Positions 22,851 to 59,879 of a DNA stretch of 60,269 nucleotides are shown one piece after another. Source of the stretch: Macrostomum lignano (Eukaryota). The stretch is from NCBI GenBank assembly GCA_002269645.1, contig NIVC01004113.1, positions 1 through 60,269 on the forward strand, given 5' to 3'. Each line of letters opens with the position of its first letter. The stretch's first letter is position 1. The translations under genes and the position numbers were made by a program. Under the pieces are notes generated by a model. That model was not told the origin of the DNA, made no database searches, and saw only the letters and a program-made list of their open reading frames with translations.

Positions 22851-24561
22851 TCACAGTCCGCGCTGGATGACCGGAATGATGCCCTGAAGCAGCTTCACCC
22901 ACACGGCCTTGTTGTCCACGAAGGCCTTGCCGAGTCGGCGCTCGAATACAACAGCCAGGGCCGCGTTGAGGTCCTGCGGAATGCGGGGCAGTGGGAGGCG
23001 TGAATGGCTGCGGTGAGGGGTGAATGGCTGCGGTGAAGGGTGAATGGCTGCGGTGAGGGGTGAATGGCTGCGGTGAGGGATGAATGGGTGTGGAGAGGGG
23101 TGAATGGCTGCGGTGAGGGGTGAATGGATGCAATGAGGGGTGAATGGATGCGGTGAGGGGTGAAGGGCTGCAGTGAGGGGTGAATGGCTGCAGTGAGGGG
23201 TGAATGGCTGCAGTGAGGGGTGAATGGCTGCAATGAGGGGTGAATGGATGCGGTGAGGGGTGAATGGCTGCGGTGAGGGGTGAATGGCTGCGGTGAGGGG
23301 TGAATGGATGCGGTGAGGGGTGAATGGCTGCGGTGAGGGGTGAATGGATGCGCTGAGGGGTGAATGGATGCAGTGAGGGGTGAATGGATGCGCTGAGGGG
23401 TGAATGGATGCAGTGAGGGGTGAATGGATGCAGTGAGGGGTGAATGGATGTGGTGAGGGCTGAATGTATGCGATGAGGGGTGAATGGGTTCGGAGAGGGA
23501 TGAATGGATACGATGAGGGGTGAATGGATACGATGAGGGGTGAATGGATGCGCTGAGGGGTGAATGGATGCAGTGAGGGGTGAATGGATGCAGTGAGGGG
23601 TGAATTGATGTGGTGAGGGCTGAATGTATGCGATGAGGGGTGAATGGGTTCGGAGAGGGATGAATGGATGCGATGAGGAGTGAGGGCCTCACCTCGAAGT
23701 GCTTCGCGGAAAGGTGGTGGCTCTTGTGCGAGGCGCCGATGAGCTCCAGAGAGCTGGCGCACACCTCCATGTCGTCCAGACTCTGGATGGCGCCGTCCAG
23801 CGTGTTGACCACCCGCAGCGCGTGGGCCCGCATTTTCGGCATTTTCTCCAGCTCGGCCCGGCTCTTGCCTTTGAAGTCGCGGAACAGTTCCTGGTGCTGG
23901 GGGAACATCTCGAACAGGCTGCGGATGATGAGGGGTGAGTCAGTGCTGTGAATGTATGTCAGTGTGCCAATGTATGCCAGTGTGCCAATGTATGTCAGTG
24001 TGCCAATGTATGTCAGTGTGCTAATGTATGTCTGTGTGCCAATGTATGCCAGTGTGCCAATGTATGTCAGTGTGCCAATGTATGTCAGTGTGCCAATGTA
24101 TGTCAGTGTGCCAATGTATGTCAGTGTGCCAATGTATGTCAGTGTGCTAATGTATGTCTGTGTGCCAATGTATGTCAGTGTGCCAATGTATGTCAGTGTG
24201 CCAATGTATGTCAGTGTGCCAATGTATGTCAGTGTGCCAATGTATGTCAGTGTGCCAATGTATGCCAGTGTGCCAATGTATGCCAGTGTGCCAATGTATG
24301 TCAGTGTGCCAATGTATGTCAGTGTGCCAATGTATGCTAGTGTGCCAATGTATGTCAGTGTGCCAATGTATGTCAGTGTGCCAATGTATGTCAGTGTGCC
24401 AATGTATGTCAGTGTGCCAATGTATGTCAGTGTGCCAATGTATGTCAGTGTGCCAATGTATGCCCTTACGTCATAAAGACGTCCATTCCAAGGGCCTTCT
24501 TATCCTTGATTGCTTGCTGCCAGCCGCTCAGGATAATCTTCTTCTCAACCTCGTTAAGCAT
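22851..24561 (-). CDS. Globin A (intracellular single-domain globin, 146 aa)
   Basis: Exons 24561-24470 (MLNEVEKKIILSGWQQAIKDKKALGMDVFMT), 23918-23693 (LFEMFPQHQELF..KMRAHALRVV..ASHKSHHLSAKHFE) and 22973-22851 (DLNAALAVVF..VIQRGL*). Intron phases 2 and 0 fit the ancestral B12.2 and G7.0 positions. CD1 Phe, E7 His and F8 His are present. Confidence 0.95.
22995..23690. repeat. 20-bp minisatellite (GGGGTGAATGGCTGCGGTGA)n in globin A intron 2
   Basis: Direct reading. Confidence 0.92.
23945..24462. repeat. 18-bp minisatellite (GTGTGCCAATGTATGTCA)n in globin A intron 1
   Basis: Direct reading. Confidence 0.93.
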
Positions 24562-25035
24562 GACGAACTGCTTGAATAGCTTTCTGGTTAGCAACTGCAG
24601 ACTAAGTTTGCTTTGAGCTGTCTACTGAATTTTCGTTACCAAAGAACAGAAGCTGCGGCCTCTTTTGTAACCCCCGCAGTCTTGCTGTGTCCCCCTTCCA
24701 GGGCATCGGTTGGCCCTGGCTGACAAGTGGAATTTGTTGACTTCTCTGACAGTTCAGTTACATCGCTGTCTACTTATAGTACGAAAGTAAGAATGTTTTG
24801 CTATATTTCTAAGCGAAAAACTGAACACAACGAGAAACAGGAAAATTGTCAATCAAAGGTTGACCTCAGCTGGTAAAAACCGATTTTTTATTGCTGTGAG
24901 CGCTCGTGTCTCATCTGATACGAGGGAATCAGTATTGAATATTTAAATAACTTAATGGCTGAATTTCAGTTATAGTCTGCTGTTAGAATTTTCAGTGCCT
25001 GCATGGGTTGCAGCGCCAGCCTCACATGCCGCGCT

Positions 25036-25252
25036 AGTAGTATGAGTTTATGCAACTCTGCCGCACTTGCACTGCGGAGATAGGCGGTAATGAAAAAGGA
25101 TAGGAGGACGTAAAAGAGCCAGCTGAGATAGCCAATGGAAATAAGGGGCGTGGGGTGGGTGTGATTGGCTGGGTGGTGAAACGCTCTTGCAACTCTGCCG
25201 CACTGGGGGAGGCAGGTAGCAAAGCAAAGAATCGGAAGGTTTTGGAATAGCA
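25036..25252 (+). repeat. Left TIR of the Maverick-derived element (217 bp)
   Basis: Reverse complement of 31021-31238 with few differences; direct copy at about 30408-30622. Confidence 0.95.
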
Positions 25253-25568
25253 GAGTAAACAAATTAAAAACAAGTTAGGCATGGCGTGGAAACGTCCACC
25301 TCAATTTGTGTCTGGCCTATGCAACTCCTCGGCGTCCCCCACTGATAGGATAGGATATCCCACTGACAGGATAGGATAGGCATACTATCCTATAGCATGC
25401 CTATGCAACTCTGCCGCACAATTTGTCAGTGCGGAGTGAAATAGATAAGAGAGAGGCTCTGGTCTTCTTGAGTGTCTGGCTCTGGCAATTCTAATAAATG
25501 GGCAATAAACTTTGTAACGGGTGCGGGGCTTGAGTGGAAAGGGTAGGGTTTGAAGTGGAGGTGAGGTT

Positions 25569-25855
25569 GGTGAGCTCTAAAACAGTTGTTCAACTCTGCC
25601 GCACTTTCACTGTGCAGGGACAGAGAGGTGAGCTCTAAAACAGTTGTTCAACTCTGCCGCACTTTCACTGTGCAGGGACAGAGAGGTGAGCTCTAAAACA
25701 GTTGTTCAACTCTGCCGCACTTTCACTGTGCAGGGACAGAGAGGTGAGCTCTAAAACAGTTGTTCAACTCTGCCGCACTTTCACTGTGCAGGGACAGAGA
25801 GGTGAGCTCTAAAACAGTTGTTCAACTCTGCCGCACTTTAATGTGCAGGTACAGA
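25569..25855. repeat. Subterminal 58-bp tandem repeat x5 of the Maverick element
   Basis: Units at 25571, 25629, 25687, 25745 and 25803, each containing CAACTCTGCCGCAC. Confidence 0.9.
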
Positions 25856-26013
25856 GAGGTGGGCTCAAGGCGCACTGGCATTGTTAATAAATGAGCAATA
25901 AACTTTGTAACGGGTTGTGTGGCTGATGCCGACGAGCAGCCGCTGCTTGATGCCGAATAAGCAAAAAAGGGGTGGGTGCTCATTCTGACACCCACCCCAC
26001 TCCGCTTTGAGGG

Positions 26014-26021
26014 TATATAAG
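26014..26021 (+). promoter_or_regulatory. TATA box (TATATAAG) upstream of the PC4-like gene
   Basis: About 90 bp upstream of ATG 26106; motif evidence only. Confidence 0.5.
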
Positions 26022-26105
26022 CCCCCGATTTTTTAAATTCAACGGTAAATCTATTTTTTTCTTGAATTCGATTTCACAAGTTTTCGAAGTGATTTTGTGT
26101 GAACT

Positions 26106-26837
26106 ATGGATATTAGTGAAGGTTACAGAGTGCAGGTGCAAGAATTCGAAGGCCAGAAATACATCGCGATCAGGAAGTTTTACCGACATGGCAGCACAGC
26201 AAGCCTCAAGCCTGGTGTTCCTGGTTTCAACTTGAATGTGCAGCAGTGGACGAAGCTAAAGGAGTTAAAGCGCTCCCTGGTGAAGTCGGCTCTGAACAAC
26301 GAGCTCAAGGTCATCAAGCTGGGCTTCGACAAATTTGTTCAAGTCAAGGATGGCCTCATCTGGCTGAAGCGGCTGCCTGAGGACTGCTGTGATGAATTTA
26401 TGAAGCGCAACACCGTGCCGCTGTCTCCGAGGCTCTGGCAGAAGCTGTGGCAGACTTCGGACTGGATAGACCAGCAGCTATCAGAGCCCTACCAAGGTGC
26501 GGGGGCGAAGTACGAGCTGAGCTCATCCGAAGATGAGGACGAAGACGCCACCCTCATACTGCCGGTCAAGACTGAGGCTGCTGAAGGCGAGGAGGAGGTC
26601 GGCTCACCATCGGAGCTGACAACCGACATCGAGGCTGTGACTTCCACACCTTTGGCCAGAGCCGGCACATCGACTGGGAACATCCCGGCGGAGGACACGG
26701 ACCTACAGCAGGATCCGGTGTGGTACCGATTCCGGGCTCATGCCGCTGAGGTGGAGAACAATCGGAAGCGAAAACTGCCGTATCCTCTGCGCAGGCAGGA
26801 GACAATGAAGGTGTCTAAGCTGCGTTTTGAAGACTGA
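26106..26837 (+). CDS. PC4/Sub1-like ssDNA-binding protein (one clear and one degenerate PC4 repeat, acidic linker, basic tail)
   Basis: YRVQVQEFEGQKYIAIRKFY..KPGVPGFNLNVQQWTKL fits the PC4 pattern (VSVSEFKGKxxIDIREY..PGKKGISLxxEQW). A second unit reads IKLGFDKFVQV..TVPLSPRLWQKL. Confidence 0.75.
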   Translation: MDISEGYRVQVQEFEGQKYIAIRKFYRHGSTASLKPGVPGFNLNVQQWTKLKELKRSLVKSALNNELKVIKLGFDKFVQVKDGLIWLKRLPEDCCDEFMKRNTVPLSPRLWQKLWQTSDWIDQQLSEPYQGAGAKYELSSSEDEDEDATLILPVKTEAAEGEEEVGSPSELTTDIEAVTSTPLARAGTSTGNIPAEDTDLQQDPVWYRFRAHAAEVENNRKRKLPYPLRRQETMKVSKLRFED

Positions 26838-27205
26838 GCTGGAGGTTGGATGAGACTGATGAGACTCAAAGGATAATTCAGTTTGGTTTGCTTTTGTCTA
26901 ATTTTATTCAGCTAAGTTAAGTTTTGACAATTGTCGTAACCGTTTAGTCTTATTTATTCAGGTGTTAACAAACCAAGTTTATACTTAAATGCATGCAGTT
27001 TATACTTATTTGCACTACTCAGTGTAACTATTTCCTGCAATCTTCTTTTTAAGATCACCAACTGTTCGCAGTCCCTAAGTTAAAAAAATATAATAAGTGT
27101 ACGCTGTATGAGTTTAATATTGGAATAAAACCTGTCTTTTAAAACGCCAATCGTTGTTCTTAAGAAAAACATACCTGTGTACATCTGGTTCTTTTTCATT
27201 TGAGG

Positions 27206-28273
27206 ATGGAAAAAATTTACTTTGACCCACAACAGCCGGCTAGTTTTTCTAGTGCTTCCAAACTGTTGAATGAAGTTAGGAGAAGAGGAGATCACATATC
27301 CACTAAGTGCATAGAACAGTGGCTCAGTGAGCAGCCAGTGCACACCCTACACAAGCCAGCTAGAAGGCGATATCCAAGGGCCCCAATCATAGTGCGGGCT
27401 ATCGATGATCAGTGGGAACTTGACTTGGTAGAAATGATTCCATTCGCAAAGTATAATAAAGGCTACAAATATATTCTTACATGTATTGACGTACTGTCAA
27501 AGTGTGCTTGGGCCAAGGCACTGAAAAATAAAACTGCTACAGAAGTGAAGTCAGCATTCGAGAGCATACTGAGAAGTTCAAAGCGCCAGCCACGCACAGT
27601 TCGCACAGATCAGGGGAAGGAATTTATCAACTCCACTTTCCGTCAATACTGCATTGACAGAGGGATTCTGGCTTTCCCAACTAACAGCGAGCAGAAGGCG
27701 GCTGTCATTGAGCGATGGAATCGAACTCTGAAAAGTAGAATGTGGCGCTACTTCACCTACAAGAGTACACTGCACTGGCTTGATGTGCTGCCTAAGCTGG
27801 TAAAATCTTACAACAATACCTATCACAGAAGCATCAAAATGGCACCCACTAGTGTCTGCAAAGAGAATGAATCTGAAGTGTGGATGAACCTGTACGACGG
27901 AAAAGCAGTCGAGACTCTAGAAAAATTAAGGAAGCCTAAATTCGCTGAAAACCAGTCAGTGAGAATTTCCAATGCTCCACGGCTATTCAAAAAGGGATAC
28001 AAAGCGAGCTGGAGTGAGGAAGTGTACACCGTGGTGAGCAGAGCCCCAAAACATTATCCCTACATGTACAAGATTAAAGACATGCGGGGGGAAGAGATTC
28101 GAGGACTCTTCCATGAGCACGAGCTGCAGGCTGTCCCGGACTCACAGCGGCTGTATGTGATTGAGAAGATCCTGAAAACGGAGAAGCGGAAGGGAAAAAT
28201 TCGCTATCTGGTGAAGTGGGCCGGCTACGACTCGACTGGCTGGGTGGATGAAAAAGACTTAAGAAAGGTTTAG
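27206..28273 (+). CDS. Polinton-type DDE (rve) integrase with C-terminal chromodomain
   Basis: QWELDLVEM (D), RTDQGKEF (D), AVIERWNRTLK (E), YNNTYHRSIKMAP, WSEEVYTV; chromodomain YVIEKIL..YLVKWAGYDSTGWV; intact ORF. Confidence 0.95.
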   Translation: MEKIYFDPQQPASFSSASKLLNEVRRRGDHISTKCIEQWLSEQPVHTLHKPARRRYPRAPIIVRAIDDQWELDLVEMIPFAKYNKGYKYILTCIDVLSKCAWAKALKNKTATEVKSAFESILRSSKRQPRTVRTDQGKEFINSTFRQYCIDRGILAFPTNSEQKAAVIERWNRTLKSRMWRYFTYKSTLHWLDVLPKLVKSYNNTYHRSIKMAPTSVCKENESEVWMNLYDGKAVETLEKLRKPKFAENQSVRISNAPRLFKKGYKASWSEEVYTVVSRAPKHYPYMYKIKDMRGEEIRGLFHEHELQAVPDSQRLYVIEKILKTEKRKGKIRYLVKWAGYDSTGWVDEKDLRKV

Positions 28274-28292
28274 CTTTGGCACATCCCTCATC

Positions 28293-29120
28293 ATGAAGTT
28301 TATCTTTATAATGCGAACTATTTTGATTAACAGTGAGCATGCTGAAGGTACTCCTAGTGACTTTAATTTTTACCTGTCTTCACCTATTTACTTGGATCGA
28401 AATGTGGACTATGAGGCAGGTCTGGCTGAAATCCATCTGCCTGCTGCATGGTTCAATGTTGACGAGCCTTACTGCTTCACTGTCTCAGATGGAAGAGAGC
28501 ATGAGGCCCTGGTTCTTCAACCCGGACGCTTTGCTAGAGTGGAGGAGCTGGTGGAGCGCCTGAATGAGCTGCTGGCCAACTCTGATTCGCTGTTCTTTGA
28601 TGCGATGAGTGACAGGGAGTCTGAGATGGAGGCTGATGAGTCCGGCCTGATGGGGCGTAGTGGCAACAGGGAATTTGGTATGAAGTTCGAAATCCGCAAC
28701 TCACGAACTGTGGTGCACAACAACACTACGAGAGCAGAGCTGTTTCTCCCATCCAGCAAAATTCTGCATTGGCTGGGATTTGGAAACCAGGCTGTGAAAA
28801 TCCAGCCAGGGAGCCGCGTGTCCGAGCATTGCATTGGCTGTCCGCGCACCAGCTTAATCAATGTACACTGCAGTGTCGTTGAGTCAACTAATTGCAACTG
28901 GGGCTCCTTGTTGAGAACAGTTGGAATGAAAGCTGGCATTGAATGGGGCAACTATCAAACAAAAATATTTAAGAAAACAATATTCTTCCCGATTCAACGA
29001 ATCAGTCTTCTTCACAGCATTCGAGTTCAGCTGCGGGACATCTATGGTTGCCCACTGATTGCCCAGACTCACAGCCCTGTTCTTCTCACAGTTCAGATTC
29101 GGGAGAAACGCATTCAATGA
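28293..29120 (+). CDS. Minor capsid protein (penton) of Polinton/adintovirus type
   Basis: N-terminal TPSDFNFYLSSPIYL..YEAGLAEIHLPAAWFNV and C-terminal FFPIQ..IRVQLRDIYG resemble Polinton penton motifs; sits between integrase and hexon. Confidence 0.75.
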   Translation: MKFIFIMRTILINSEHAEGTPSDFNFYLSSPIYLDRNVDYEAGLAEIHLPAAWFNVDEPYCFTVSDGREHEALVLQPGRFARVEELVERLNELLANSDSLFFDAMSDRESEMEADESGLMGRSGNREFGMKFEIRNSRTVVHNNTTRAELFLPSSKILHWLGFGNQAVKIQPGSRVSEHCIGCPRTSLINVHCSVVESTNCNWGSLLRTVGMKAGIEWGNYQTKIFKKTIFFPIQRISLLHSIRVQLRDIYGCPLIAQTHSPVLLTVQIREKRIQ

Positions 29121-29506
29121 ACTACCAGCAGCTGATCCAGCAATATTCGGGGGTGAGGACAGGACACGAAAAGCCTGCACTCTATGGCTGTGGGAGCTTC
29201 CCTGGGATCATGACATACCAGCCTCCTCCAGCGGCTACATCCTTATCCTCAACGCTTAGCAATGTCAGGCGCAAAAGAAATACTGAAGCAAGTCCGAAAC
29301 GATTGAAGAAGAAGAAGCGCACCCGAAAGGCAACTGGTGGCGATCGCCCCAATAAGAGGTCCAATGGAAGAAAGCCGAGCAAGGCTAGTGGGAAAAAGCT
29401 TAAGAATAGGAAGACGAAAGCAAAGAAGAATAGAGCAGGCGGAGGAAAGCGAAAGCAAAAAGTCAGCAAGAAAACTGTGAAACGCGTGCTCGACTCTCTG
29501 TCATAG
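29117..29506 (+). CDS. Small basic core/DNA-condensing protein (pVII/pX-like), 129 aa
   Basis: ATG overlaps the penton TGA (ATGA); LYGCG fits the adenain consensus (M/L/I)xGx-G; very K/R-rich C-terminal half. Confidence 0.65.
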   Translation: MNYQQLIQQYSGVRTGHEKPALYGCGSFPGIMTYQPPPAATSLSSTLSNVRRKRNTEASPKRLKKKKRTRKATGGDRPNKRSNGRKPSKASGKKLKNRKTKAKKNRAGGGKRKQKVSKKTVKRVLDSLS

Positions 29507-29508
29507 AC

Positions 29509-30411
29509 ATGGCTTACGGATTCAATCCCAGACTTGATTTATTTAAAACGCCCGTTTTACAAACCTGCATTGAAAAAGCTACTTATGTTGATATTCACCC
29601 AGTAAATTCCATTAGTGCAAACTCCCCCATTGAATTTGACTGCCACCAATCTGCCGATGAATACACAGATCTGCTTAATTCTTTTCTTTATATTCGCTGC
29701 CGCCTTGTGAGACTGGATGGGGGTTTGCTGAGGGAGGATGTTCGAGATGGAGATGGCATCATCACCGAGCGCAGAGACAGTGATGTGCACCCAGAAAACT
29801 TTGTTCTGTCTACAGCCTTCTCAGATGTAATTGTGAGCATTAATCAGCGAGTGGTGTCTGGTGGAGACCAGCTCTATCCCTACCATGCGTACTTCAAAGC
29901 ACTAATGTGCTCATCTGATGCCCAGCAACTAAAACTTTACCCTGCTGGCTTCCTGGAGCCGGACTCGGCAGCTGAAGAGCACACGGAGAGCCACAGGGAA
30001 TCCCGATGGATGGAGTATGCGGGGCCGCTCTTCAGCGATGTTTTCCAGTGCCCAGTGTTTCTGCTAAGCAATCTGCACTTGCACATCAAACTGGTCCCCA
30101 GCGATGGGGCCTTTGCCATCAGAACCCCGAATGTAAACAACGCGGCTTATCGCATGGAAATCTCTCACAGCATTCTGCATCTTCGCCGAGTCAAAGTGAT
30201 GCCCCACATCAGCCTGGCTCACGAGCAGGGGCTGACAAACCAAAATGCACTGTATCCCATCGAGCGAACTGAAATGCAGAACTTCATCCTACCCCAGGGC
30301 ATTCAATCTAAAAACATTGAAGGATTCACTCATGGAAAATTGCCGAAGTTCATCATGCTGGCCTTCGTGAGCCACCGAGCATTCAACGGTCATCATCACG
30401 CGAGTCCGTAG
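29509..30411 (+). pseudogene. Major capsid protein (hexon, double jelly-roll), C-terminally truncated at 300 aa
   Basis: LDLFKTPVLQTCIE..HPVNSI..PIEF..YTDLLNSFLYIR and LPKFIMLAFVSHRAFNG..SP resemble Polinton MCP motifs. The stop TAG (30409-30411) comes from the internal TIR copy. Confidence 0.88.
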
Positions 30412-31233
30412 TATGAGTTTATGCAACTCTGCCGCACTTGCACTGCGGAGATAGGCGGTAATGTAAAAGGATAGGAGGGCGTAAAAGAGCCAGCTGAGAT
30501 AGCCAATGGAAATAAGGGCGTGGGGTGGGTGTGATTGGCTGGGTGGTGAAACGCTTATGCAACTCTGCCGCACTGGGGGAGGCAGGTAGCAAAGCAAAGA
30601 ATCGGAAGGTTTTGGAATAGCAGAGTAAACAAATTAAAAACAAGGTAGGCATGGCGTGGAAACGTCCACCTCAATTTGTGCCTGGCTCGGCAACTCCTCG
30701 GCGTCCCCCACTGTGTTTATCCTATAGCATGCCTATGCAACTCTGCCGCACAATTTGTCAGTGCGGAGTGAAATAGATAAGAGAGAGGCTCTGGTCTTCT
30801 TGAGTGTCTGGCTCTGGCGATTCTAATAAATGGGCAATAAACTTTGTAACGGGTGCGGGGCTTGAGTGGAAAGGGTAGGGTTGGAAGTGGAGGTGAGGTT
30901 GATGAGCTCTAAAACAGTTGTTCAACTCTGCCGCACTTTCACTGTGCAGGGACAGAGGTGAGCTCTAAAAAACAGTTGTTCAACTCTGCCGCACTTTCAC
31001 TGTGCAGGGACAGACAGTTGTGCTATTCCAAAACCTTCCGATTCTTTGCTTTGCTACCTGCCTCCCCCAGTGCGGCAGAGTTGCATAAGCGTTTCACCAC
31101 CCAGCCAATCACACCCACCCCACGCCCTTATTTCCATTGGCTATCTCAGCTCTGGCTCTTTTACGCCCTCCTATCCTTTTACATTACCGACTATCTCCGC
31201 AGTGCAAGTGCGGCAGAGTTGCACAAACTCATA

Positions 31234-31238
<5 letters not shown>
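30408..31238 (+). mobile_element. Maverick-derived mini-element (MITE-like, ~830 bp, both TIRs, no genes)
   Basis: Left TIR at about 30408-30622 (first A missing), a subterminal copy of 25253-25700, and right TIR 31021-31238. Confidence 0.85.
31021..31238 (-). repeat. Right TIR of the Maverick-derived element (218 bp)
   Basis: Reverse complement of the left TIR; followed by the TSD CGCGCT. Confidence 0.95.
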
Positions 31239-34549
<3,311 letters not shown>

Positions 34550-35462: not shown

Positions 35463-36705
35463 TTAGGGTGAGCCAAGTCCGGAATTTGAACAATTTAAAA
35501 CTATAACAAATAGTGTCAAGAACAAACAGTTTACAGCGATGTGATGTAGTTGCCATTCAAGGCCCTGAACCCCTCCCATCTTGCTGGCAATGCCTCAATC
35601 CCCTCCCTCCAGAAGCTCGCAGGCTTTGAATCAATCCATTTCTGCACTGCCTGCTCCACATGTTGCTTGTTGGCGAACCGCTGTCCATCACAAAAGCTCT
35701 GGAGAGACCTGAACACATGGTAGTCGCATGGCGAGAGGTCTGGCGAGTATGGTGGGTGGGGCAAAACACTGAAGCCCAGGCTTGCCAGCTTGGCCTGGGT
35801 GAGTTTTGCTTTGTGAGGCCGCGCATTGTCGAAGAGGAGCACCTTGTCGCGGTGTCCCGGGCACACGGATCGCAGCAAACGGGCGACCTGCTCCAGTTCG
35901 CTGCAGATCACCTCCGCGTTCACAGCCATGCCATGCGGGACTACCTCCCAGAAAACAGGGCCAGACGAGCAGAACCAGAAAGAGAGCAGCTCCTTGCCGC
36001 AGTGGGCGTTCCGCATTGGGCAGCTGGGTGGTTCTTCAGAAGCATCGACCCAGACGGCTGATGTGCTTGGGTTCTCATAGCAGACCCACTTCTCGTCTTG
36101 AGCTATTATCGACTTGAGAAAGTTTGGCGAACCGGCCTGGCAAAGATTCGAAGTTGCCGCATCCACCCTGGCTCTCAGCTGCTGAGGTGTCAGCTCATGG
36201 GGCACCAGAGTTGGCTTCTTCGGCACCTTGTCCGCAGCATGCAGGCTCCGCCGGACCGTGCCACAGGACACCCCAGTAGCAGCTGACAGCTTGCGCACGC
36301 TGTAGTCCGGATTGTCCTCAATGGCTTGGAGAACGGCATCGCCATCAGCAGCAGGGGGTCGGCCTGACCTCGGCTTGTCCTTCAGCTCATAGTTCTCCTC
36401 AGCAAAGCGAGAGAACCAGTCGTACACGGACGACTTGGCAACTCGCGATGTGCCTCTGCTGCGTTGCGTCCCGCATGAAAGTGGTTGAGCAGAATTGCTC
36501 GCCATTCAGTTCTTGGCTGTTCCATTGGATGCGTTTGCTGGCTAAGTAGGCAGGGTCTGGGGAACTGAGCGATGTTAAGCTAAAGAGTGATGATAAGGCT
36601 GGCCAACAGTATAGTAGATGGTTGGTGCTTTTAAGCTTTTCCATAGACAAAAATTAACTAAAAGTTCGATTCTAAAAAATTCCGGAAACTTTTGGCTCAC
36701 CCTAA
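35463..36705 (-). mobile_element. Mariner (DD34D) transposon, 1243 bp
   Basis: Imperfect TIRs (TTAGGGTGAGCCAA..TCCGGAATTT), TA TSD at 35461-62 and 36706-07, and a transposase ORF. Confidence 0.95.
35531..36525 (-). pseudogene. Mariner transposase with a frameshifting deletion in the first HTH
   Basis: The native N-terminus MEQPRTEWRAILLNHFHAGRNAAEAHREL (ATG 36525) is out of frame with AKSSVYDWFSRF..LVPHEL..QDEKW..FDNARPH..YSPDLSPCDYHVF. Confidence 0.85.
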
Positions 36706-40130: not shown

Positions 40131-43100
40131 CTACTGCACAGACATTTTCTTAGCCGGCTGTCTGTCTTCTGCCCCGCCGGCGGGCGTCTGCGACGGCCTC
40201 TTCCTGCCGCCGCGCACCATCGGCTTGGAGGTCATGGCGACTTCATCCGCGGCGACTTCATCCGCGGCGACTTCGTCGACAAGCGGCTGACCAGGTGACC
40301 AGTTGGCCAGGTAGTTGCCAGCGGCTGATGATGCGGCTGCTTCGCTGGCAGCTGAACTCTGCTGCTGCTGCTGCCGCTGCACCTGCAGCTGGCACTCCCG
40401 GTCCAGCAGCTGCCGAAGCTCCGAGAGCATTTTGTCATCCTTGAACCAGCGATGGGCGCACACCTGCCGCATGCTGAGCCGCCGATCTGTCTGCACAACC
40501 AGCATCCGCTTGATAAGATCGATAGCGGCAGGGTTCACGTTGCCCCAGTGCTCGGGCGGGAAGTTCACGTGACCGTCGCAGATCTGAGTCTGCAGATCAA
40601 AGTCTTTGCGTTCTTCAGTAAAGGGCGGATAGCCGGCAAGGCTGCGGGCGGCGTTTGGCAGTTCAGAGTTGCGGCGAGTGTGCGGAACAGCAATGGATCC
40701 CCGATTGTGGCATAGGGAACAGCAATGGATCCCCCGATTGTGGCATAGGGAACAGCAATGGATCCCCGATTGTGGCATAGGGAACAGCAATGGATCCCCG
40801 ATTGTGGCATAGGGAACAGCAATGGATCCCCGATTGTGGCATAGGGAACAGCAATGGATCCCCGATTGTGGCATAGGGAACAGCAATGGATCCCCGATTG
40901 TGGCATAGGGAACAGCAATGGATCCCCGATTGTGGCATAGGGAACAGCAATGGATCCCCGATTGTGGCATAGGGAACAGCAATGGATCCCCGATTGCGGC
41001 ATAGGGAACAGCAATGGATCCCCGATTGCGGCATAGGGAACAGCAATGGATCCCCGATTGTGGCATAGGGAACAGCAATGGATCCCCGATTGCGGCATAG
41101 GGAACAGCAATGGATCCCCGATTGTGGCATAGGGAACAGCGATGCATCCCCGATTGCGGCATAGGGAACAGCAATGGATCCCCGATTGCGGCATAGGGAA
41201 CAGCGATGCATCCCCAAAGTTAGCCAAAGGAATCCAGCCTTACCAGATGAAGAAAATGACACCCAGAGACCAGACGTCAACCTTGCTGGTGTAGGGCTGG
41301 CCATTGCTCTTCATGATCTCCGGGGCCAGGTAGCACTGGGTGCCGCAGAATGTCCGCAGCATGGTCTCGCTGGACACCAGCTTGGAGACGCCAAAGTCGG
41401 CCAATTTAACCAGCGTCTTGTTCTGGCCGGACTCCAGTAGTAGGAAATTCTCCGGCTATAGGTGGATAGGCGATTGAATTCGGTCAATGCTTTATCCTTT
41501 CTATAGAGTATAGGTAAACACAGGAATAGGTAGAAGGGCAGAAGAATTACCTTCAGGTCCCGGTGAGTTATGTCCTTATCGTGAAGATACTGTAATAAAG
41601 AAAAAGAACATGGTATGTGTTATTGAATGCGTAAATGAAACCTTATAAAATAAAAAATGCCATCGGTTTGTCTATTTTCGTTTCTGATATCCTAGTTTCT
41701 ATGCTTGTCTGCCTGTCTGTGTGATAGTGTATGTGTGTTTAGGTAGACTTTTCGTCGGTTGAACAGCCTCGTTAGCTGGACCTTTTGATTGCATGATGGA
41801 CCCTTTAGGTGGACCACCTCATTTTTTTCGGAAAGCACAGAAGAGGATTTAGCTTGACCAATTGCATAGTCGGAAAGACAGTCATCAGTGGTTCACGTCC
41901 TAATAAAAGTAGTTTGGATTTTAAGTTTGTTTTGGTTTACATGGACCTTGTACATCGTCCACCTAAACCACATTGCCGAGGTCCTCCTAACCTTTGCACG
42001 CTTGCTAGTAGCGTTTAGAGAACGTGTAGGGCAGCCAGCCATTGATTTGGAAAATTTACTAACCGCTCGTAACTTCGATTATCTTGTTGAAGCCACAATG
42101 AATTTTACGATGTTACGAATCGCTCGTAACTTTGATTATCTTGTTGAAGCCACAATGAATTTTAAGATGTTACGAATCGCTCGTAACTTTGATTATCTTG
42201 TTGAAGCCACAATGAATTTTAAGATGTTACGAATCGCTCGTAACTTTGATTATCTTGTTGAAGCCACAATGAATTTTAAGATGTTACGAATCGCTCGTAA
42301 CTTTGATTATCTTGTTGAAGCCACAATGAATTTTACGATGTTACGAATCGCTCGTAATGATGAATTTATGAGCAAGAAAAGCGAAGAGACATCTGATAGC
42401 TTTGAAACTCTATCGATTCCGCTTAAAATCGGCTTTAGCTTGAAGACGGCAGCCGAAGTCTACATGTTTTTGCCTTAAAAAGCGATTCATCATCAAAAGT
42501 CTAGGAAAGAAGAAACTTTTTTTAGAGTCTGGGTCTCTAAAAGCGAAAAGACTCTACCATCGCCCATCTAACTTTGAAGGAAAGAAAAGCTGAAAAAGCC
42601 TTTACTCTGCCCAGTAAGATCCTTACATGCTATTTAAAGCAGGCGTTGGCCCCGGCTGTAATCTATCCGTCGGAAACCTTCAAATTGACACTTAGACTGG
42701 GAAGCAAAAAAGTTTGATCAAGATGACGTCAATACTGAATCTCTACTCAGTGAGCTTAATTTGAAAATAAAAAACAATGTTCCTTCCGTATATGCGCGGC
42801 AAACGAGAAGAAAAATTGGTTCCTCTGCTCGTGCAACTAGAGGTGGCCACTATAATTAATAAGCTCATAAGCACCCACAATTCACCAACGGGCAACGAGT
42901 AAGTTTTTGGCATGCCCAATGGAATGCGATATCTATCACCGTTTGAAGCCATTACGCTCGTAAAAATGTCATTGTACAAGAGCTAGCGCTGTGTACGACC
43001 ACCTCCTGATGTGCAATCAATGTGCTAAAGTTAGAAATGCAGAGAAATTTGAAATTATCGATTGTAATCGCCAGAGTTTGAAGTTGTCTACTCTTGGGCT

Positions 43101-56472: not shown

Positions 56473-57935
56473 TCAGGCAGACGGCAGTTGGAGGCCGCGG
56501 GCAACAAAGTAGAACTCGGCTGAGTCGCCCCTGCTAGCCGGCGGTTTGACTCGCCGCACGCCACCAGTAAAGAATCGATGCAGCGGCGCCTCTAGGCGCG
56601 CGGTCTCCGCGCCGTCCCAAAGTTTGCAGACAAAGCCGGAGCCCGGCCGGCCCAGACGAAGGCACAGCTGAAGCGCCAATTCGCAGAGTTCAACGCAGAC
56701 GGCGGAGTCGAGACTACGCTCGCCGGAAGCGCTCGGCGCCATGTCGGAGAGCACCCAATCGACTGGTCGGTCCGTCAGAGCTTCTCGCAGCGATGCCAGA
56801 CACTGGGCAGATCGGATGTCCACCTCGGAGAGGCAGACGGCATTCGGCACTGGGGCGATGTGTTGAAGGTCGAATGCTACGATCAGGGCCTGGCTGCGAG
56901 CCGGCTCCGGAACCTGGTAGAATGTGTTGGGGAGACTGAGAAAGTGACAGACAATGACCTTGAATTGAGCTCCCAAAAATAAAATATTTCCAGTTTATAT
57001 TTTTAGGCCGATGTGCAACCGACAGCGGCGCATCTGAAGGCTGAGTACGGCTGTTCAGTCCAAGGATTGGGGGGTCGCCACACTCCACATACACCCACAA
57101 TTATCCCAGTTGATGCTGGCCCCCATTTTACAGCTGGATGAACTGAAGCAATGCAGACTTAAGTGTCTTGCTCAAAAATACAAATCGTTCCGAGTGGGAT
57201 CGGGAATCGAACAAGCGACATTTCAGTCGTAAGTCCGATGCTCTAACCACTAGGCTACAAGCCCTAGGCTACAACCCCTCACTAAGCTACAACCCCTCAC
57301 TAGGCTACAACCCCTCACTAAGCTACAACCCCACACTAAGCTACAACCCTCACTAGGCTACAACCCTTCACTAGGCTACAACCCCTCACTAAGCTACAAC
57401 CCCTCACTAAGCTACAACCCCTCACTAAGCTACAACCCCTCACTAGGCTACAACCCTTCACTAGGCTACAACCCCTCACTAAGCTACAACCCCTCACTAA
57501 GCTACAACCCCTCACTAAGCTACAACCCCTCACTAGGCTACAACCCCGATGAATAAAATACGAACAGAAGCAAGCCTGCCGGGAGATAAGGTTAGCTATA
57601 GTAATAAAAAACATGAGGCAAACCTGGGGTCCTTTGAGCTGCCTAGCGAGCACTTGAGTCCAGGAGCCGGGAGCGGCGCCGCACTCAACAATGCACTGGC
57701 CGGGCTGGAAGAGGTTCAGCTTCTCGTGCATCTCCATCAATTTGTAGGCGCTGCGGCATCTGTAGGACTCGTAGCGGGCCTTGCGCACGTAAACATCGCG
57801 GAGCTGCCGGACAACCCACGGATTGCCGGGATTGCGGATTGCGCAATAGGCGCGGCGCTGCAACAGCAGAGTTTGGGAGCTGATTATTGACTTGGCTCGG
57901 CTCCTTATTGAAATATTCTGTGTGGAGGATATACG
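56473..57935 (-). CDS. MRM2: Mitochondrial rRNA 2'-O-methyltransferase (FtsJ/RrmJ family)
   Basis: Exon 57935-57624 (WVVRQLRDVYVRKARYESYRCRSAYKL..ECGAAPGSW) and exon 56913-56473 (VLSDMAP..VCKLWDG..VKPPASRGDSAEFY). The K-D-K-E tetrad is intact. Start codon unresolved. Confidence 0.9.
57187..57270 (-). pseudogene. tRNA-like sequence (tRNA pseudogene or SINE head) in the MRM2 intron
   Basis: TAGCCTAGTGGTTAGAGCA (A box) and GTTCGATTCC (B box); imperfect anticodon arm with CTTACGA loop. Confidence 0.6.
57250..57548 (-). repeat. 18-bp tandem repeat of the tRNA 5' end/A box (GGGGTTGTAGCYTAGTGA)n
   Basis: Runs directly into the tRNA-like head; about 16 copies. Confidence 0.85.
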
Positions 57936-57957
57936 CTGTAGGATTATACTGGAGTAT

Positions 57958-59298
57958 GGGGCCCAGCAACTAAGGATCTGGGAAGCTGGCCAGTAACTGA
58001 GGGTCTGAGAAGCTGGCCCAACAACTGAGGGTCTGGGAAGCTGGCCCAGCAACTGAGGATCTGGGAGGCTGGCCCAGCAACTGAGGGTCTGGGAGGCTGG
58101 CCCAACAGCTGAGGGTCTGGGAGGCTGGCCCAGCAACTGAGGGTCTGGTAGACTGGCCCAGCAACCGAGGATCTGGGAAGCTGGCCCAGTAACTGAGGGT
58201 CTGAGAAGCTGGCCCAACAACTGAGGGTCTGGGAAGCTGGCCCAGCAACTGAGGATCTGGGAGGCTGGCCCAGCAACTGAGGGTCTGGGAGGCTGGCCCA
58301 GCAACTGAGGGTCTGGGAGGCTGGCCCAGCAACTGAGGGTCTGGGAGGTTGGCCCAGCAACTGAGGATCTGGGAGGCTGGCCCAGCAACTGAGGGTCTGG
58401 GAAGCTGGCCCAGTAACTGAGGGTCTGAGAAGCTGGCCCAACAACTGAGGGTCTGGGAGGCTGGCCCAGCAACTGAGGGTCTGGTAGACTGGCCAGCAAC
58501 CGAGGGTCTGGTAGACTGGCCCAGCAACCGAGGGTCTGGGAAGCTGGCCCAGCAACTGAGGGTCTGGGAGGCTGGCCCAGCAACTGAGGGTCTGGGAGGC
58601 TGGCCCAGCAACTGAGGGTCTGGGAAGCTGGCCCAGTAACTGAGGGTCTGAGAAGCTGGCCCAACAACTGAGGGTCTGGGAGGCTGGCCCAGCAACTGAG
58701 GGTCTGGTAGACTGGCCCAGCAACCGAGGGTCTGGTAGACTGGCCCAGCAACCGAGGGTCTGGGAAGCTGGCCAGCAACTGAGGGTCTGGGAGGCTGGCC
58801 CAGCAACTGAGGGTCTGGGAGGCTGGCCCAGCAACTGAGGGTCTGGGAGGCTGGCCCAACAGCTGAGGGTCTGGGAGGCTGGCCAGCAACTGAGGGTCTG
58901 GTAGACTGGCCCAGCAACCGAGGGTCTGGGAAGCTGGCCCAGCAACTGAGGGTCTGGGAGGCTGGCCCAGCAACTGAGGGTCTGGGAGGCTGGCCCAGCA
59001 ACTGAGGGTCTGGGAGGCTGGCCCAACAGCTGAGGGTCTGGGAGGCTGGCCAGCAACTGAGGGTCTGGTAGACTGGCCCAGCAACCGAGGGTCTGGGAAG
59101 CTGGCCAGCAACCGAGGGTCTGGGAAGCTGGCCCAGCAACTGAGGGTCTGGGAGGCTGGCCCAGCAACTGAGGGTCTGGGAGGCTGGCCAGCAACTGAGG
59201 GTCTGGGAGGCTGGCCCAGCAACTGAGGGTCTGGGAAGCTGGCCCAGCAACTGAGGATCTGGGAGGCTGGCCCAGTAACTGAGGATCTGGGAGGCTGG
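57958..59298. repeat. 28-bp minisatellite (GGCCCAGCAACTGAGGGTCTGGGAGGCT)n upstream of MRM2
   Basis: Direct reading; no stop codons on the minus strand, hence three long ORFs. Confidence 0.93.
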
Positions 59299-59879
59299 CG
59301 GTGGCCCAGCTCGAGGGTCGGTGAGGTTGGAAACTGAGCTGTAATACAATCACTCGTAAATATTGGTTCATCACGCATATTCCTATATCCCATCTGTGCA
59401 AAAATAAAAAATATATTCTGCTCAGAAAAGCAATTAATCAACCAACAGACACAGTGCGGCAAACGCAGGTATTTGACTATATATTTATTTTCAAGTTCAA
59501 CAAGGTAAAAGCACATATCACAAGACAGTATACCAGAGTTTTACTATGCATCGATTAATATTTATTATGGACAATAGCTATTATTAGACAATGGTTTATA
59601 ACATTTATATAATAAATCTGGGTTAGTTATGCTTGTTTTGTTCCTTGAGCACACAATGACTAATGCAATATAAATATGAAGCTAAAAAAAGCATCAATTA
59701 CAAGCGCTCCTCAGGTCATATATTATCATGAATGCTAGAGAACATCAGAAAACTTAAAAGAAACGAATTAACAAAGTTGAACACGGTTTGTACAGATGGA
59801 TAAACCAAAGCGTTGCAAAGTATTTTGGAATTCTGCTGATCATATATCTATCAATCAGATCAGAAACTTTAACTAAAAC

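What the first reader, a model, noticed from the sequence alone, without database searches (positions are those of the whole stretch)
25022..31244. Virus-like element inserted two codons before a globin stop; its TIR supplies a new stop
The insertion splits ...CAG CGC G|GC ATG TGA. On the minus strand the TIR reads G-AG TAG, so VIQRGM* becomes VIQRE*. The protein is essentially intact, while the native 3' UTR and poly(A) signal are displaced by 6.2 kb. The perfect TSD implies a recent integrase-mediated event. This is a near-silent coding insertion that swaps the 3' UTR of a host gene.
Basis: seen in the sequence. Interest (0 to 1): 0.75.

Follow-up and report, generated by a model that had tools for sequence, protein, structure and literature searches.

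The report
Shortened Maverick element inside flatworm globin gene
A 6.2-kb cut-down copy of a Maverick/Polinton virus-like element sits five bases before the stop codon of one of three copies of a globin gene in the flatworm Macrostomum lignano. Its conserved end sequence supplies a new stop, which is a neat but ordinary example of a recent mobile-element insertion.

Summary
The window is Macrostomum lignano scaffold NIVC01004113.1. The element spans 25036-31238 (6203 bp). It has 217-218-bp inverted ends and a perfect 6-bp duplication (CGCGCT) on each side. It splits the last exon of globin B, so ...VIQRGM* becomes ...VIQRE*.

Two paralogous scaffolds of the same assembly carry the empty site, with one copy of the 6 bp and the RGM* ending. 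One of them is 99.2-100% identical in the flanks, so the insertion is real and recent.

The element is a deletion derivative of a Maverick/Polinton. Its ends are 5'-(AGT)2...(ACT)2-3'. It carries a PC4-like gene, an rve+chromo integrase, two small ORFs and a shortened double-jelly-roll capsid gene. All of these are collinear with a 14.4-kb relative that also has a protease and a protein-primed polymerase.

The new TAG lies inside the conserved AGTAGT end motif.

The element lacks its whole replication half. Its right end is odd: a direct copy of the left end followed by the inverted end. The two ends are only 94.6% alike, so the element is probably a composite.

Expression of the altered globin is untested. 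The next poly(A) hexamer lies 1.7 kb away.

The parts
34458..34549 (-). Globin B exon 1 (ATG at 34549)
   Evidence: Exons joined as they stand give a 145-aa globin. Pfam Globin 4.8e-13 on exon 2. Matches nerve haemoglobin 8oup at 1.8e-15.
33445..33670 (-). Globin B exon 2
   Evidence: Pfam Globin.
31234..31353 (-). Globin B exon 3 as it now reads, ending ...VIQRE*. The GAG codon spans 31239-31237 and the new TAG stop is 31236-31234, inside the element's end.
   Evidence: Translation. The intron ends in ...ccgcag just upstream.
31239..31244 (.). Right copy of the 6-bp target-site duplication (CGCGCT)
   Evidence: Present once in the empty sites of L006 and L007.
31021..31238 (-). Right terminal inverted repeat, ending ...ACTACT
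   Evidence: Inverted repeats I2/I3. 94.6% identical to the left end. The end motif matches the (AGT)2//(ACT)2 described for Mavericks (PMC8097293).
30408..31017 (+). Internal direct copy of the element's own left end: inverted-repeat sequence plus subterminal region with two 58-bp repeats. Together with 31021-31238 it forms a small unit of the form end-subterminal-inverted end.
   Evidence: Direct repeats D4-D6 at 96-98%. Inverted repeats I1 at 100% over 131 nt and I4 at 98%. Three-way comparison.
29509..30411 (+). Major capsid protein gene (double jelly-roll), shortened. 300 codons remain, against 419-432 in relatives.
   Evidence: Thirteen homologues; the full-length ones are about 420-430 aa. 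AlphaFold model of the family has pLDDT 73. Top Foldseek matches are PBCV-1 Vp54, Sputnik and mavirus capsid proteins at E about 1e-12, plus adintovirus and bracovirus-borne proteins.
29117..29506 (+). Small basic ORF (129 aa from its ATG; K+R make up 25% of the longer 152-aa reading frame scored), in the position of the Maverick 'PW' gene
   Evidence: Position matches the module integrase - minor capsid - PW - major capsid - protease (PMC8097293). A 131-aa counterpart is present in L001.
28293..29120 (+). ORF of 275 aa (269 from the ATG shared with relatives), in the position of the minor capsid (penton) gene
   Evidence: 58% identical to P0017 of L001. Counterparts in L010 and L011. The fold was not established (pLDDT 28), so the assignment rests on position only.
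27206..28273 (+). Integrase: rve catalytic core plus C-terminal chromodomain, 355 aa, open
   Evidence: Pfam rve 5.6e-13 and Chromo 1.3e-05, both above cut-off. Same length as the L001 and L011 integrases. Shares all 32 invariant columns of a 16-member alignment, including D73, D135 and E169. The family is large: 2,477 clusters at E<=1e-30.
26106..26837 (+). Accessory ORF with a PC4-like (single-stranded-DNA-binding coactivator p15) domain, 243 aa
   Evidence: Pfam PC4 2.4e-09, 37 bits against a cut-off of 25. The same gene sits in the same place in L001.
25253..25866 (+). Left subterminal region, including 5.2 copies of a 58-bp tandem repeat (25569-25866)
   Evidence: Carries the 14-nt motif CAACTCTGCCGCAC, which occurs 15 times, all in the element's end regions, against 0.03 expected.
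25036..25252 (+). Left terminal inverted repeat, starting AGTAGT...
25030..25035 (.). Left copy of the 6-bp target-site duplication (CGCGCT)
25022..25029 (-). Displaced end of the globin B reading frame: (G)GC ATG TGA, i.e. the old ...GM* ending
   Evidence: Contiguous with the exon in L006 and L007 and in the UniProt model A0A1I8I8W0, which ends ...VIQRGM.
24887..24892 (-). AATAAA of the native globin B 3' region, 129 nt after the old stop and now 6.2 kb from the coding sequence
22851..24561 (-). Globin A, the tandem paralogue (146 aa, ends ...VIQRGL*). Its ATG is 474 nt from the element's left end.
   Evidence: Identical to the NCBI protein BOX15_Mlig002954g1 (P0014).

Best explanation
One of the three paralogous copies of the globin A/B locus in Macrostomum lignano received an integrase-mediated insertion. 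The inserted piece is a 6.2-kb, non-autonomous deletion derivative of a Maverick/Polinton virus-like element.

Shown:
- The integrase made a 6-bp staggered cut at AGCGCG, inside the last codons of globin B, and this was duplicated on both sides.
- Every Maverick of this type ends in AGTAGT. That motif holds a TAG, which here falls in frame. The globin now ends ...QRE* instead of ...QRGM*.
- The globin is separated from its own 3' UTR and AATAAA.
- The element keeps the accessory PC4-like gene and most of the integrase/capsid module (integrase, minor-capsid-position ORF, small basic ORF and a shortened major capsid gene). It lacks the protease, the ATPase and the whole replication module.

Inferred:
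- The right end is a small end-subterminal-inverted-end unit abutting the shortened capsid gene, and the two outer ends differ by about 5%. The piece was therefore most likely already a composite of two family members when it moved, using the outer ends and an integrase supplied by itself or by a full-length copy.
- The globin protein is probably still functional.
- Its mRNA must either end at non-canonical sites or run at least 1.7 kb antisense into the element. With five other globin gene copies in the genome, the allele is probably close to neutral.
For: - Junctions, duplication and reading frames.
- Empty sites in L006 and L007 with a single AGCGCG and RGM*. Flanks are 99.2-100% (L006) and about 97-98% (L007) identical.
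- Window identified as NIVC01004113.1 of GCA_002269645.1.
- The assembly consists mostly of three-copy paralogous blocks, with 2.2% SNPs among paralogues: PMC10733133.
- The element is collinear at 72-78% nucleotide identity with L001. L001 carries a PC4-like gene, rve integrase, a 269-aa ORF, a 131-aa ORF, a 427-aa capsid protein, Peptidase_C5, a P-loop protein and a 1281-aa DNA_pol_B_2 protein.
- Capsid fold.
- End motif (AGT)2//(ACT)2, 6-bp duplications and module order as in vertebrate Mavericks: PMC8097293.
- Integrase open, full length, with conserved acidic residues.
- Outer ends 94.6% alike. The internal copy differs from both the left end (97.3% identical) and the right end (96.4%).
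- Poly(A) hexamers.
Against: - No read-level or RNA data could be consulted. Exact-sequence look-ups of both globin B endings, of ORFs spanning the junction and of the element's proteins found nothing.
- This copy has no protein-primed polymerase, so it fails the strict definition of a Polinton. It is assigned by descent from, and collinearity with, a relative that has one.
- No second copy from M. lignano was available. The composite-origin step and the family's normal right end are therefore inferred.
- The minor-capsid assignment is positional only.
- The source organism of the best relative (Logan run SRR31628403) is unknown.
Confidence: 0.9

Rival explanations
1. A full-length Maverick inserted here. 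It was shortened and rearranged afterwards in place, by deletion or by ectopic recombination or conversion with other copies.
For: The duplication and end motifs only show that the outer ends were integrated, not what lay between them. M. lignano paralogues differ mainly by indels (PMC10733133).
Against: A simple deletion does not create a second, direct copy of the left end next to the right end. The flanks differ from the empty copy by only 0-0.8%, which is too little time for the two ends to drift to 94.6% in place. Another copy's sequence would still have to be brought in.
Confidence: 0.2
2. Two steps occurred at one site. A small 0.83-kb end-subterminal-inverted-end element inserted first and made the duplication. 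The 5.4-kb left part was added later at its left border.
For: The internal copy of the end lacks the outermost one or two bases of the AGTAGT motif. This is not what a clean nested integration would leave. The small unit's own two ends are 100% alike over 131 nt.
Against: It requires a second event to land exactly between the duplication and the first base of the resident element, and no second duplication is seen. No free-standing copy of the small unit was found in the window or in the paralogous scaffolds.
Confidence: 0.1
3. The insertion allele is in effect a null or strongly reduced allele of globin B rather than a near-silent change. The cause would be loss of the nearby poly(A) signal, antisense transcription from the element, or silencing of the element.
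For: There is no AATAAA or ATTAAA on the globin strand for 1,690 nt after the new stop. All element genes run antisense to the globin. Five other globin A/B gene copies could mask a loss.
Against: The exons, splice sites and upstream region are intact and nearly identical to the empty copy, with 0-2 substitutions per exon. Only the last two residues, beyond the aligned globin core, are changed.
Confidence: 0.4
4. The junctions are an assembly artefact, with a repeat wrongly joined into the globin locus.
For: The genome is a repeat-rich neopolyploid that is hard to assemble (PMC10733133). No reads could be checked.
Against: A chimeric join would not produce an exact 6-bp duplication of the sequence present once in two empty paralogues. 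Nor would it place canonical Maverick end motifs exactly at both borders.
Confidence: 0.02
5. The 'empty' paralogues once carried the element and lost it by excision.
For: None specific.
Against: Both empty sites hold exactly one copy of the 6 bp, with no footprint. L007 is the more diverged paralogue, so two independent perfect losses would be needed.
Confidence: 0.02

Closest known systems
Mavericks / Polintons of animals, as described for vertebrates (Barreat & Katzourakis 2021, PMC8097293)
   Same: 5'-(AGT)2...(ACT)2-3' end motif. Perfect 6-bp target-site duplication. Inverted ends within the reported 46-1,447 bp range. Gene order integrase - minor capsid - PW - major capsid (- protease in the relative). 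Polymerase on the opposite strand in the relative L001.
   Different: The host is a free-living flatworm. This copy is 6.2 kb, against 12.7-24.6 kb for intact elements. It lacks polymerase, ATPase and protease, and has one shortened capsid gene. It carries a PC4-like accessory gene and an extra internal copy of its left end.
Adintoviruses / MELD viruses and virophage-type capsids (Sputnik, mavirus, PBCV-1 Vp54)
   Same: The modelled capsid protein of the family has the double jelly-roll fold and matches these at Foldseek E of 1e-11 to 1e-14.
   Different: Sequence identity is only 8-14%. There is no evidence here of a free virus form. This copy is integrated and incomplete.
Non-autonomous deletion derivatives and MITE-like end-only copies of DNA transposons (general knowledge of transposon biology)
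   Same: Keeps the ends needed for integration while losing internal genes. The 0.83-kb right-hand unit has the layout of an end-only derivative.
   Different: This copy still encodes an apparently intact integrase. Composite formation from two copies is inferred, not shown.
Mobile-element insertions that provide a premature or replacement stop and a new 3' end to a host gene (general knowledge)
   Same: A host reading frame is terminated inside the inserted element, and the native 3' UTR is displaced.
   Different: The stop lies in the conserved 6-nt terminal motif of the element itself, and the protein loses only one residue net (146 to 145 aa).

Membership tests
Maverick / Polinton | Retrovirus-like (rve) integrase | tested here: met
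   Pfam rve at 49.5 bits (cut-off 32.6) plus Chromo at 25.5 bits (cut-off 25.1). Open, 355 aa, conserved acidic residues.
Maverick / Polinton | [quoted passage not shown] | tested here: not met
   No such ORF lies in 25036-31238. It is present (DNA_pol_B_2, 63.6 bits) in the collinear relative L001. This copy is therefore filed as a deletion derivative of a Maverick, not as an autonomous member.
Maverick / Polinton | Double jelly-roll major capsid protein | tested here: met
   The family model (built on the full-length relative P0001) matches PBCV-1, Sputnik and mavirus capsid proteins. The window's gene is shortened, with 300 codons.
Maverick / Polinton | Minor (penton) capsid protein | tested here: inconclusive
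   An ORF lies at the expected position and is conserved in four relatives. The model was unusable (pLDDT 28), and there were no hits in PDB, Pfam or PHROGs.
Maverick / Polinton | Adenovirus-type cysteine protease and packaging ATPase | tested here: not met
   Absent from this copy. In L001, Peptidase_C5 scores 26.5 bits (cut-off 21.3) and a P-loop protein has only weak AAA hits.
Maverick / Polinton | Long terminal inverted repeats | tested here: met
   217-218 bp at 94.6% identity.
Maverick / Polinton | 6-bp target-site duplication | tested here: met
   CGCGCT on both sides, and once in two empty paralogous sites.
Maverick / Polinton | Conserved end motif 5'-(AGT)2 // (ACT)2-3' | tested here: met
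   The ends read AGTAGT... and ...ACTACT. Motif as in PMC8097293.
LTR retrotransposon with chromo-integrase | Direct long terminal repeats at both outer ends, and a reverse transcriptase | tested here: not met
   The outer ends are inverted, not direct. No RT domain appears in any ORF. Relatives carry a DNA polymerase and capsid genes.
Ginger-type DNA transposons (rve integrase, no capsid genes) | Single large transposase/integrase gene, short (4-5 bp, from memory) duplications, no virus-type capsid | tested here: not met
   6-bp duplication. A capsid gene is present. The relative has polymerase and protease.
Globin (host gene) | Globin fold domain, three-exon gene | tested here: met
   Pfam Globin 4.8e-13. 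PDB nerve haemoglobin 1.8e-15. 79% identical to the annotated M. lignano globin P0014, and identical in shared parts to A0A1I8I8W0.

The most novel reading that the evidence does not exclude
A minimal 'integrase plus capsid-module' Maverick derivative, bounded by ends taken from two different family members, moved as a unit after the recent polyploidisation of M. lignano. That would mean a Maverick system has been active very recently in this laboratory model. It would also mean that the conserved AGTAGT terminus works as a built-in translation terminator: the terminal 11 nt of this element's ends (AGTAGTATGAG) carry stops in two of three frames. This would soften the effect of insertions near the 3' ends of coding exons.
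Probability: 0.35. Interest if true: 0.5.

Novelty: new member of a known kind. Interest (0 to 1): 0.33.

Why it matters
- It documents an exact filled-versus-empty Maverick insertion among the three paralogous genome copies of a neopolyploid model flatworm. I found no paper describing Mavericks in this genus in the library searched.
- It shows that the family's conserved end motif can close a host reading frame almost without cost.
- It offers a dated, clean example for asking how such elements shed their replication half yet still integrate.
- For the globin itself the likely effect is small, given five other gene copies.

Tried and rejected
- Exact look-ups of the RE and RGM globin proteins, the element's proteins and junction-spanning ORFs, in the 15-billion-protein collection and its contigs. 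No independent read or transcript evidence was obtained.
- Structure prediction of the 275-aa ORF failed (pLDDT 28). Profile searches of it against PDB, Pfam and PHROGs found nothing.
- Scans of viral and metagenome contig collections with the capsid alignment gave no viral hit and one short metagenome fragment. No complete relative with both ends was recovered. L001 has no terminal inverted repeats on its contig.
- No other copy of the element or its ends lies in the window or in the paralogous scaffolds.
- Considered and rejected: LTR retrotransposon, Ginger-type transposon, misassembly, and excision from the empty copies (see rivals and membership tests).


Full report
**1. The observation**

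On the + strand the left junction reads ...TCACATGC CGCGCT AGTAGTATGAG.... The right junction reads ...CTCATACTACT CGCGCT GAATGACGG....

The element proper is 25036-31238 (6203 bp). The 6-bp duplication CGCGCT lies at 25030-25035 and 31239-31244.

On the minus strand the last globin exon now reads ...GTC ATT CAG CGC GAG TAG, giving ...VIQRE*. The stop is at 31236-31234, inside the element. The displaced remnant (G)GC ATG TGA occupies 25029-25022.

The tandem paralogue, globin A (24561-22851, minus strand), ends ...VIQRGL*. A two-residue tail after VIQR is therefore the native state.

**2. Host and empty sites**

Joining the three predicted exons of globin B as they stand gives a 145-aa globin. 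It matches Pfam Globin and nerve haemoglobin 8oup at 1.8e-15.

A protein search returned Macrostomum lignano proteins:
- P0014 (BOX15_Mlig002954g1) is identical to the window's globin A.
- UniProt A0A1I8I8W0 (P0015) is a globin B model that ends ...VIQRGM.

Looking up P0014's contigs showed that the window is scaffold NIVC01004113.1 of assembly GCA_002269645.1. Two further scaffolds carry the same locus.

In both of them (L006 = NIVC01002577.1 and L007 = NIVC01002576.1) the site is empty. The sequence is ...GTCATTC AGCGCG GCATGTGAGG..., with one copy of the 6 bp and the reading ...VIQRGM*.

The flanks of the window copy are 99.2-100% identical to L006 and about 97-98% identical to L007.

The Mlig_3_7 assembly of the inbred DV1 line is known to consist mostly of three-copy paralogous blocks. 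These differ by about 2.2% in SNPs and mainly by indels (PMC10733133). This locus is one such block, and the insertion is one such indel.

Three conclusions follow:
- The insertion is real, because an assembly error would not create an exact duplication of a sequence present once elsewhere.
- It is younger than the split from L006.
- The empty copies are ancestral, because there is no footprint in either paralogue.

**3. What the element is**

All sizeable ORFs lie on the + strand, antisense to the globins.

| ORF | Coordinates | Evidence |
|---|---|---|
| PC4-like protein | 26106-26837 | Pfam PC4, 37 bits |
| Integrase, 355 aa, rve core plus chromodomain | 27206-28273 | Both domains above Pfam cut-offs |
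| 275-aa ORF | 28293-29120 | No family hit |
| Small basic ORF | 29117-29506 | K+R make up 25% of the 152-aa reading frame |
| 300-codon ORF | 29509-30411 | Homologues are about 420-430 aa |

The best homologue of the 300-codon ORF, P0001, sits on a 14.4-kb Logan contig (L001) that is collinear with the window element at 72-78% nucleotide identity. The source organism of that contig is unknown.

L001 continues with the following genes:
- an adenovirus-type protease (Peptidase_C5, above cut-off);
- a P-loop protein;
- several small ORFs;
- on the other strand, a 1281-aa protein-primed-type DNA polymerase (DNA_pol_B_2, 63.6 bits).

An AlphaFold model of the 427-aa family (pLDDT 73, pTM 0.76) matches double jelly-roll capsid proteins with E of 1e-11 to 1e-14. 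The matches include PBCV-1 Vp54, Sputnik and mavirus. Adintovirus, adomavirus and a bracovirus-borne protein also match.

The following features are those described for Mavericks (PMC8097293):
- gene order integrase - minor capsid - PW - major capsid - protease;
- the 6-bp duplication;
- inverted ends within the reported size range;
- the end motif 5'-(AGT)2//(ACT)2-3'.

The element is therefore a Maverick/Polinton derivative. It lacks the polymerase that defines an autonomous Polinton (PMC5499653 abstract). I file it as a deletion derivative, not as a full member.

**4. State of the element's genes (counts only)**

- Major capsid gene: one truncation. The 3' part is missing, and about 70% of the usual length remains.
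- Integrase, the 275-aa ORF and the small basic ORF: no stops, frameshifts or length changes relative to L001, L010 and L011.
- PC4-like ORF: open, but 39 residues shorter than its L001 counterpart. I could not tell whether that is a break or a different start.
- Protease, P-loop ATPase, the other small ORFs of the relative and the polymerase: absent altogether.

**5. The ends**

The outer inverted repeats (25036-25252 and 31021-31238) are only 94.6% alike, with 9 mismatches and 3 gap columns in 223.

Immediately inside the right repeat lies a direct copy of the element's own left end (30408-31017). It comprises the inverted-repeat sequence plus the subterminal region, with two 58-bp repeats instead of 5.2.

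The right 0.83 kb therefore has the layout end - subterminal - inverted end, like an end-only miniature element. Its two arms are 100% complementary over 131 nt. The internal copy lacks the outermost one or two bases of the end motif.

The flanks differ from the empty paralogue by under 1%. The 5% difference between the outer ends cannot have arisen in place. The two ends must come from different family members.

The simplest reading, which is inferred, is that a composite of a shortened element and an end-only unit was integrated as one piece. Rearrangement after insertion and a two-step history remain possible.

A 14-nt motif, CAACTCTGCCGCAC, occurs 15 times, only in these end regions, against 0.03 expected. 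It is a candidate protein-binding site of the ends. This too is an inference.

**6. Consequence for the globin**

Shown:
- The protein changes from 146 to 145 aa, differing only in the last two positions. These lie beyond the region aligned to solved globins.
- The exons differ from the L006 copy by 0-2 substitutions each.
- The native AATAAA, 129 nt after the old stop, is now 6.2 kb away.
- The first AATAAA or ATTAAA on the globin strand inside the element is 1,690 nt after the new stop.

Inferred:
- A transcript of this copy would need a non-canonical 3' end or a long 3' UTR antisense to the capsid gene.
- It may also meet antisense transcription or silencing of the element.
- With two empty paralogues and three globin A copies, selection on this allele is probably weak.
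- The element's left end lies 474 nt upstream of globin A's start codon, so globin A's upstream region is also altered.

**7. The stop codon is not a coincidence of this copy**

TAG is part of the conserved AGTAGT terminus.

The terminal 11 nt, AGTAGTATGAG, carry stops in two of three frames (TAG and TGA). The third frame closes after 15 codons. This is read directly.

The same TAG also closes the shortened capsid ORF where the internal end copy abuts it.

**8. Comparison and novelty**

This works like, and descends from, animal Mavericks/Polintons. It is unusual only in four respects: its host, its PC4-like accessory gene, its composite shortened form, and its position five bases before a host stop codon. 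I found no paper on Mavericks in Macrostomum in the library searched.

Mobile-element insertions that terminate a host frame and displace a 3' UTR are well known in general. I rate it a new member of a known kind, of modest interest.

**9. What led nowhere**

- Exact look-ups for transcripts or other contigs.
- Fold and profile searches for the 275-aa ORF.
- Collection scans for complete relatives with both ends.

Noticed in passing
window 25053-25836, 30424-30994, 31070-31221: The 14-nt motif CAACTCTGCCGCAC occurs 15 times exactly, only in the element's end regions. It appears once per 58-bp tandem repeat and twice per inverted end, against 0.03 expected by chance. It may be a binding site for the integrase or another end-recognising protein.
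   Followed up: partly
window 30400-30420: The TAG of the AGTAGT end motif that ends globin B also ends the shortened capsid ORF, where the internal copy of the left end abuts it.
   Followed up: partly
window 22851-24561 and 25022-25036: Globins A and B are head-to-tail tandem paralogues (about 79% amino-acid identity), only 460 nt apart. The element's left end is 474 nt upstream of globin A's ATG, so globin A's upstream region is also changed. The element's genes run antisense to both globins.
   Followed up: partly
window 35531-36505 (-): A 324-aa ORF with Tc1/mariner-type transposase domains (Transposase_1, HTH_32, DDE_3). This is another mobile element just upstream of globin B.
   Followed up: no
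window 22995-23683, 23939-24462, 31399-32250, 32732-33230, 33943-34346: The introns of both globins are largely made of minisatellites and a (CT)n tract: 20 nt x34, 18 nt x29, 14 nt x61, CT x250, and 18/60 nt. Array lengths differ between the three paralogous scaffolds.
   Followed up: no
P0016 (UniProt A0A1I8FJD1): A 220-aa M. lignano entry named 'DNA helicase' is made of in-frame and out-of-frame pieces of globins A and B. It looks like a mis-built gene model.
   Followed up: no
L006, L007, L008 gene tables: Globin B is not annotated in the NCBI annotation on any of the three scaffolds, filled or empty. Only the older UniProt/WormBase model covers it, and that model skips part of exon 2.
   Followed up: no
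window 26106-26837; L001 218-1066: A PC4-like single-stranded-DNA-binding domain protein is a conserved accessory gene at the integrase end of this Maverick lineage. The one literature search run for this combination returned only a C. elegans transposon-gene catalogue, which I did not read.
   Followed up: partly
window 40131-41174 (-), 57336-59516 (-): These are host gene fragments: a protein kinase, matching the FHA-kinase gene next to the globins on the paralogous scaffolds, and an FtsJ-like methyltransferase.
   Followed up: no
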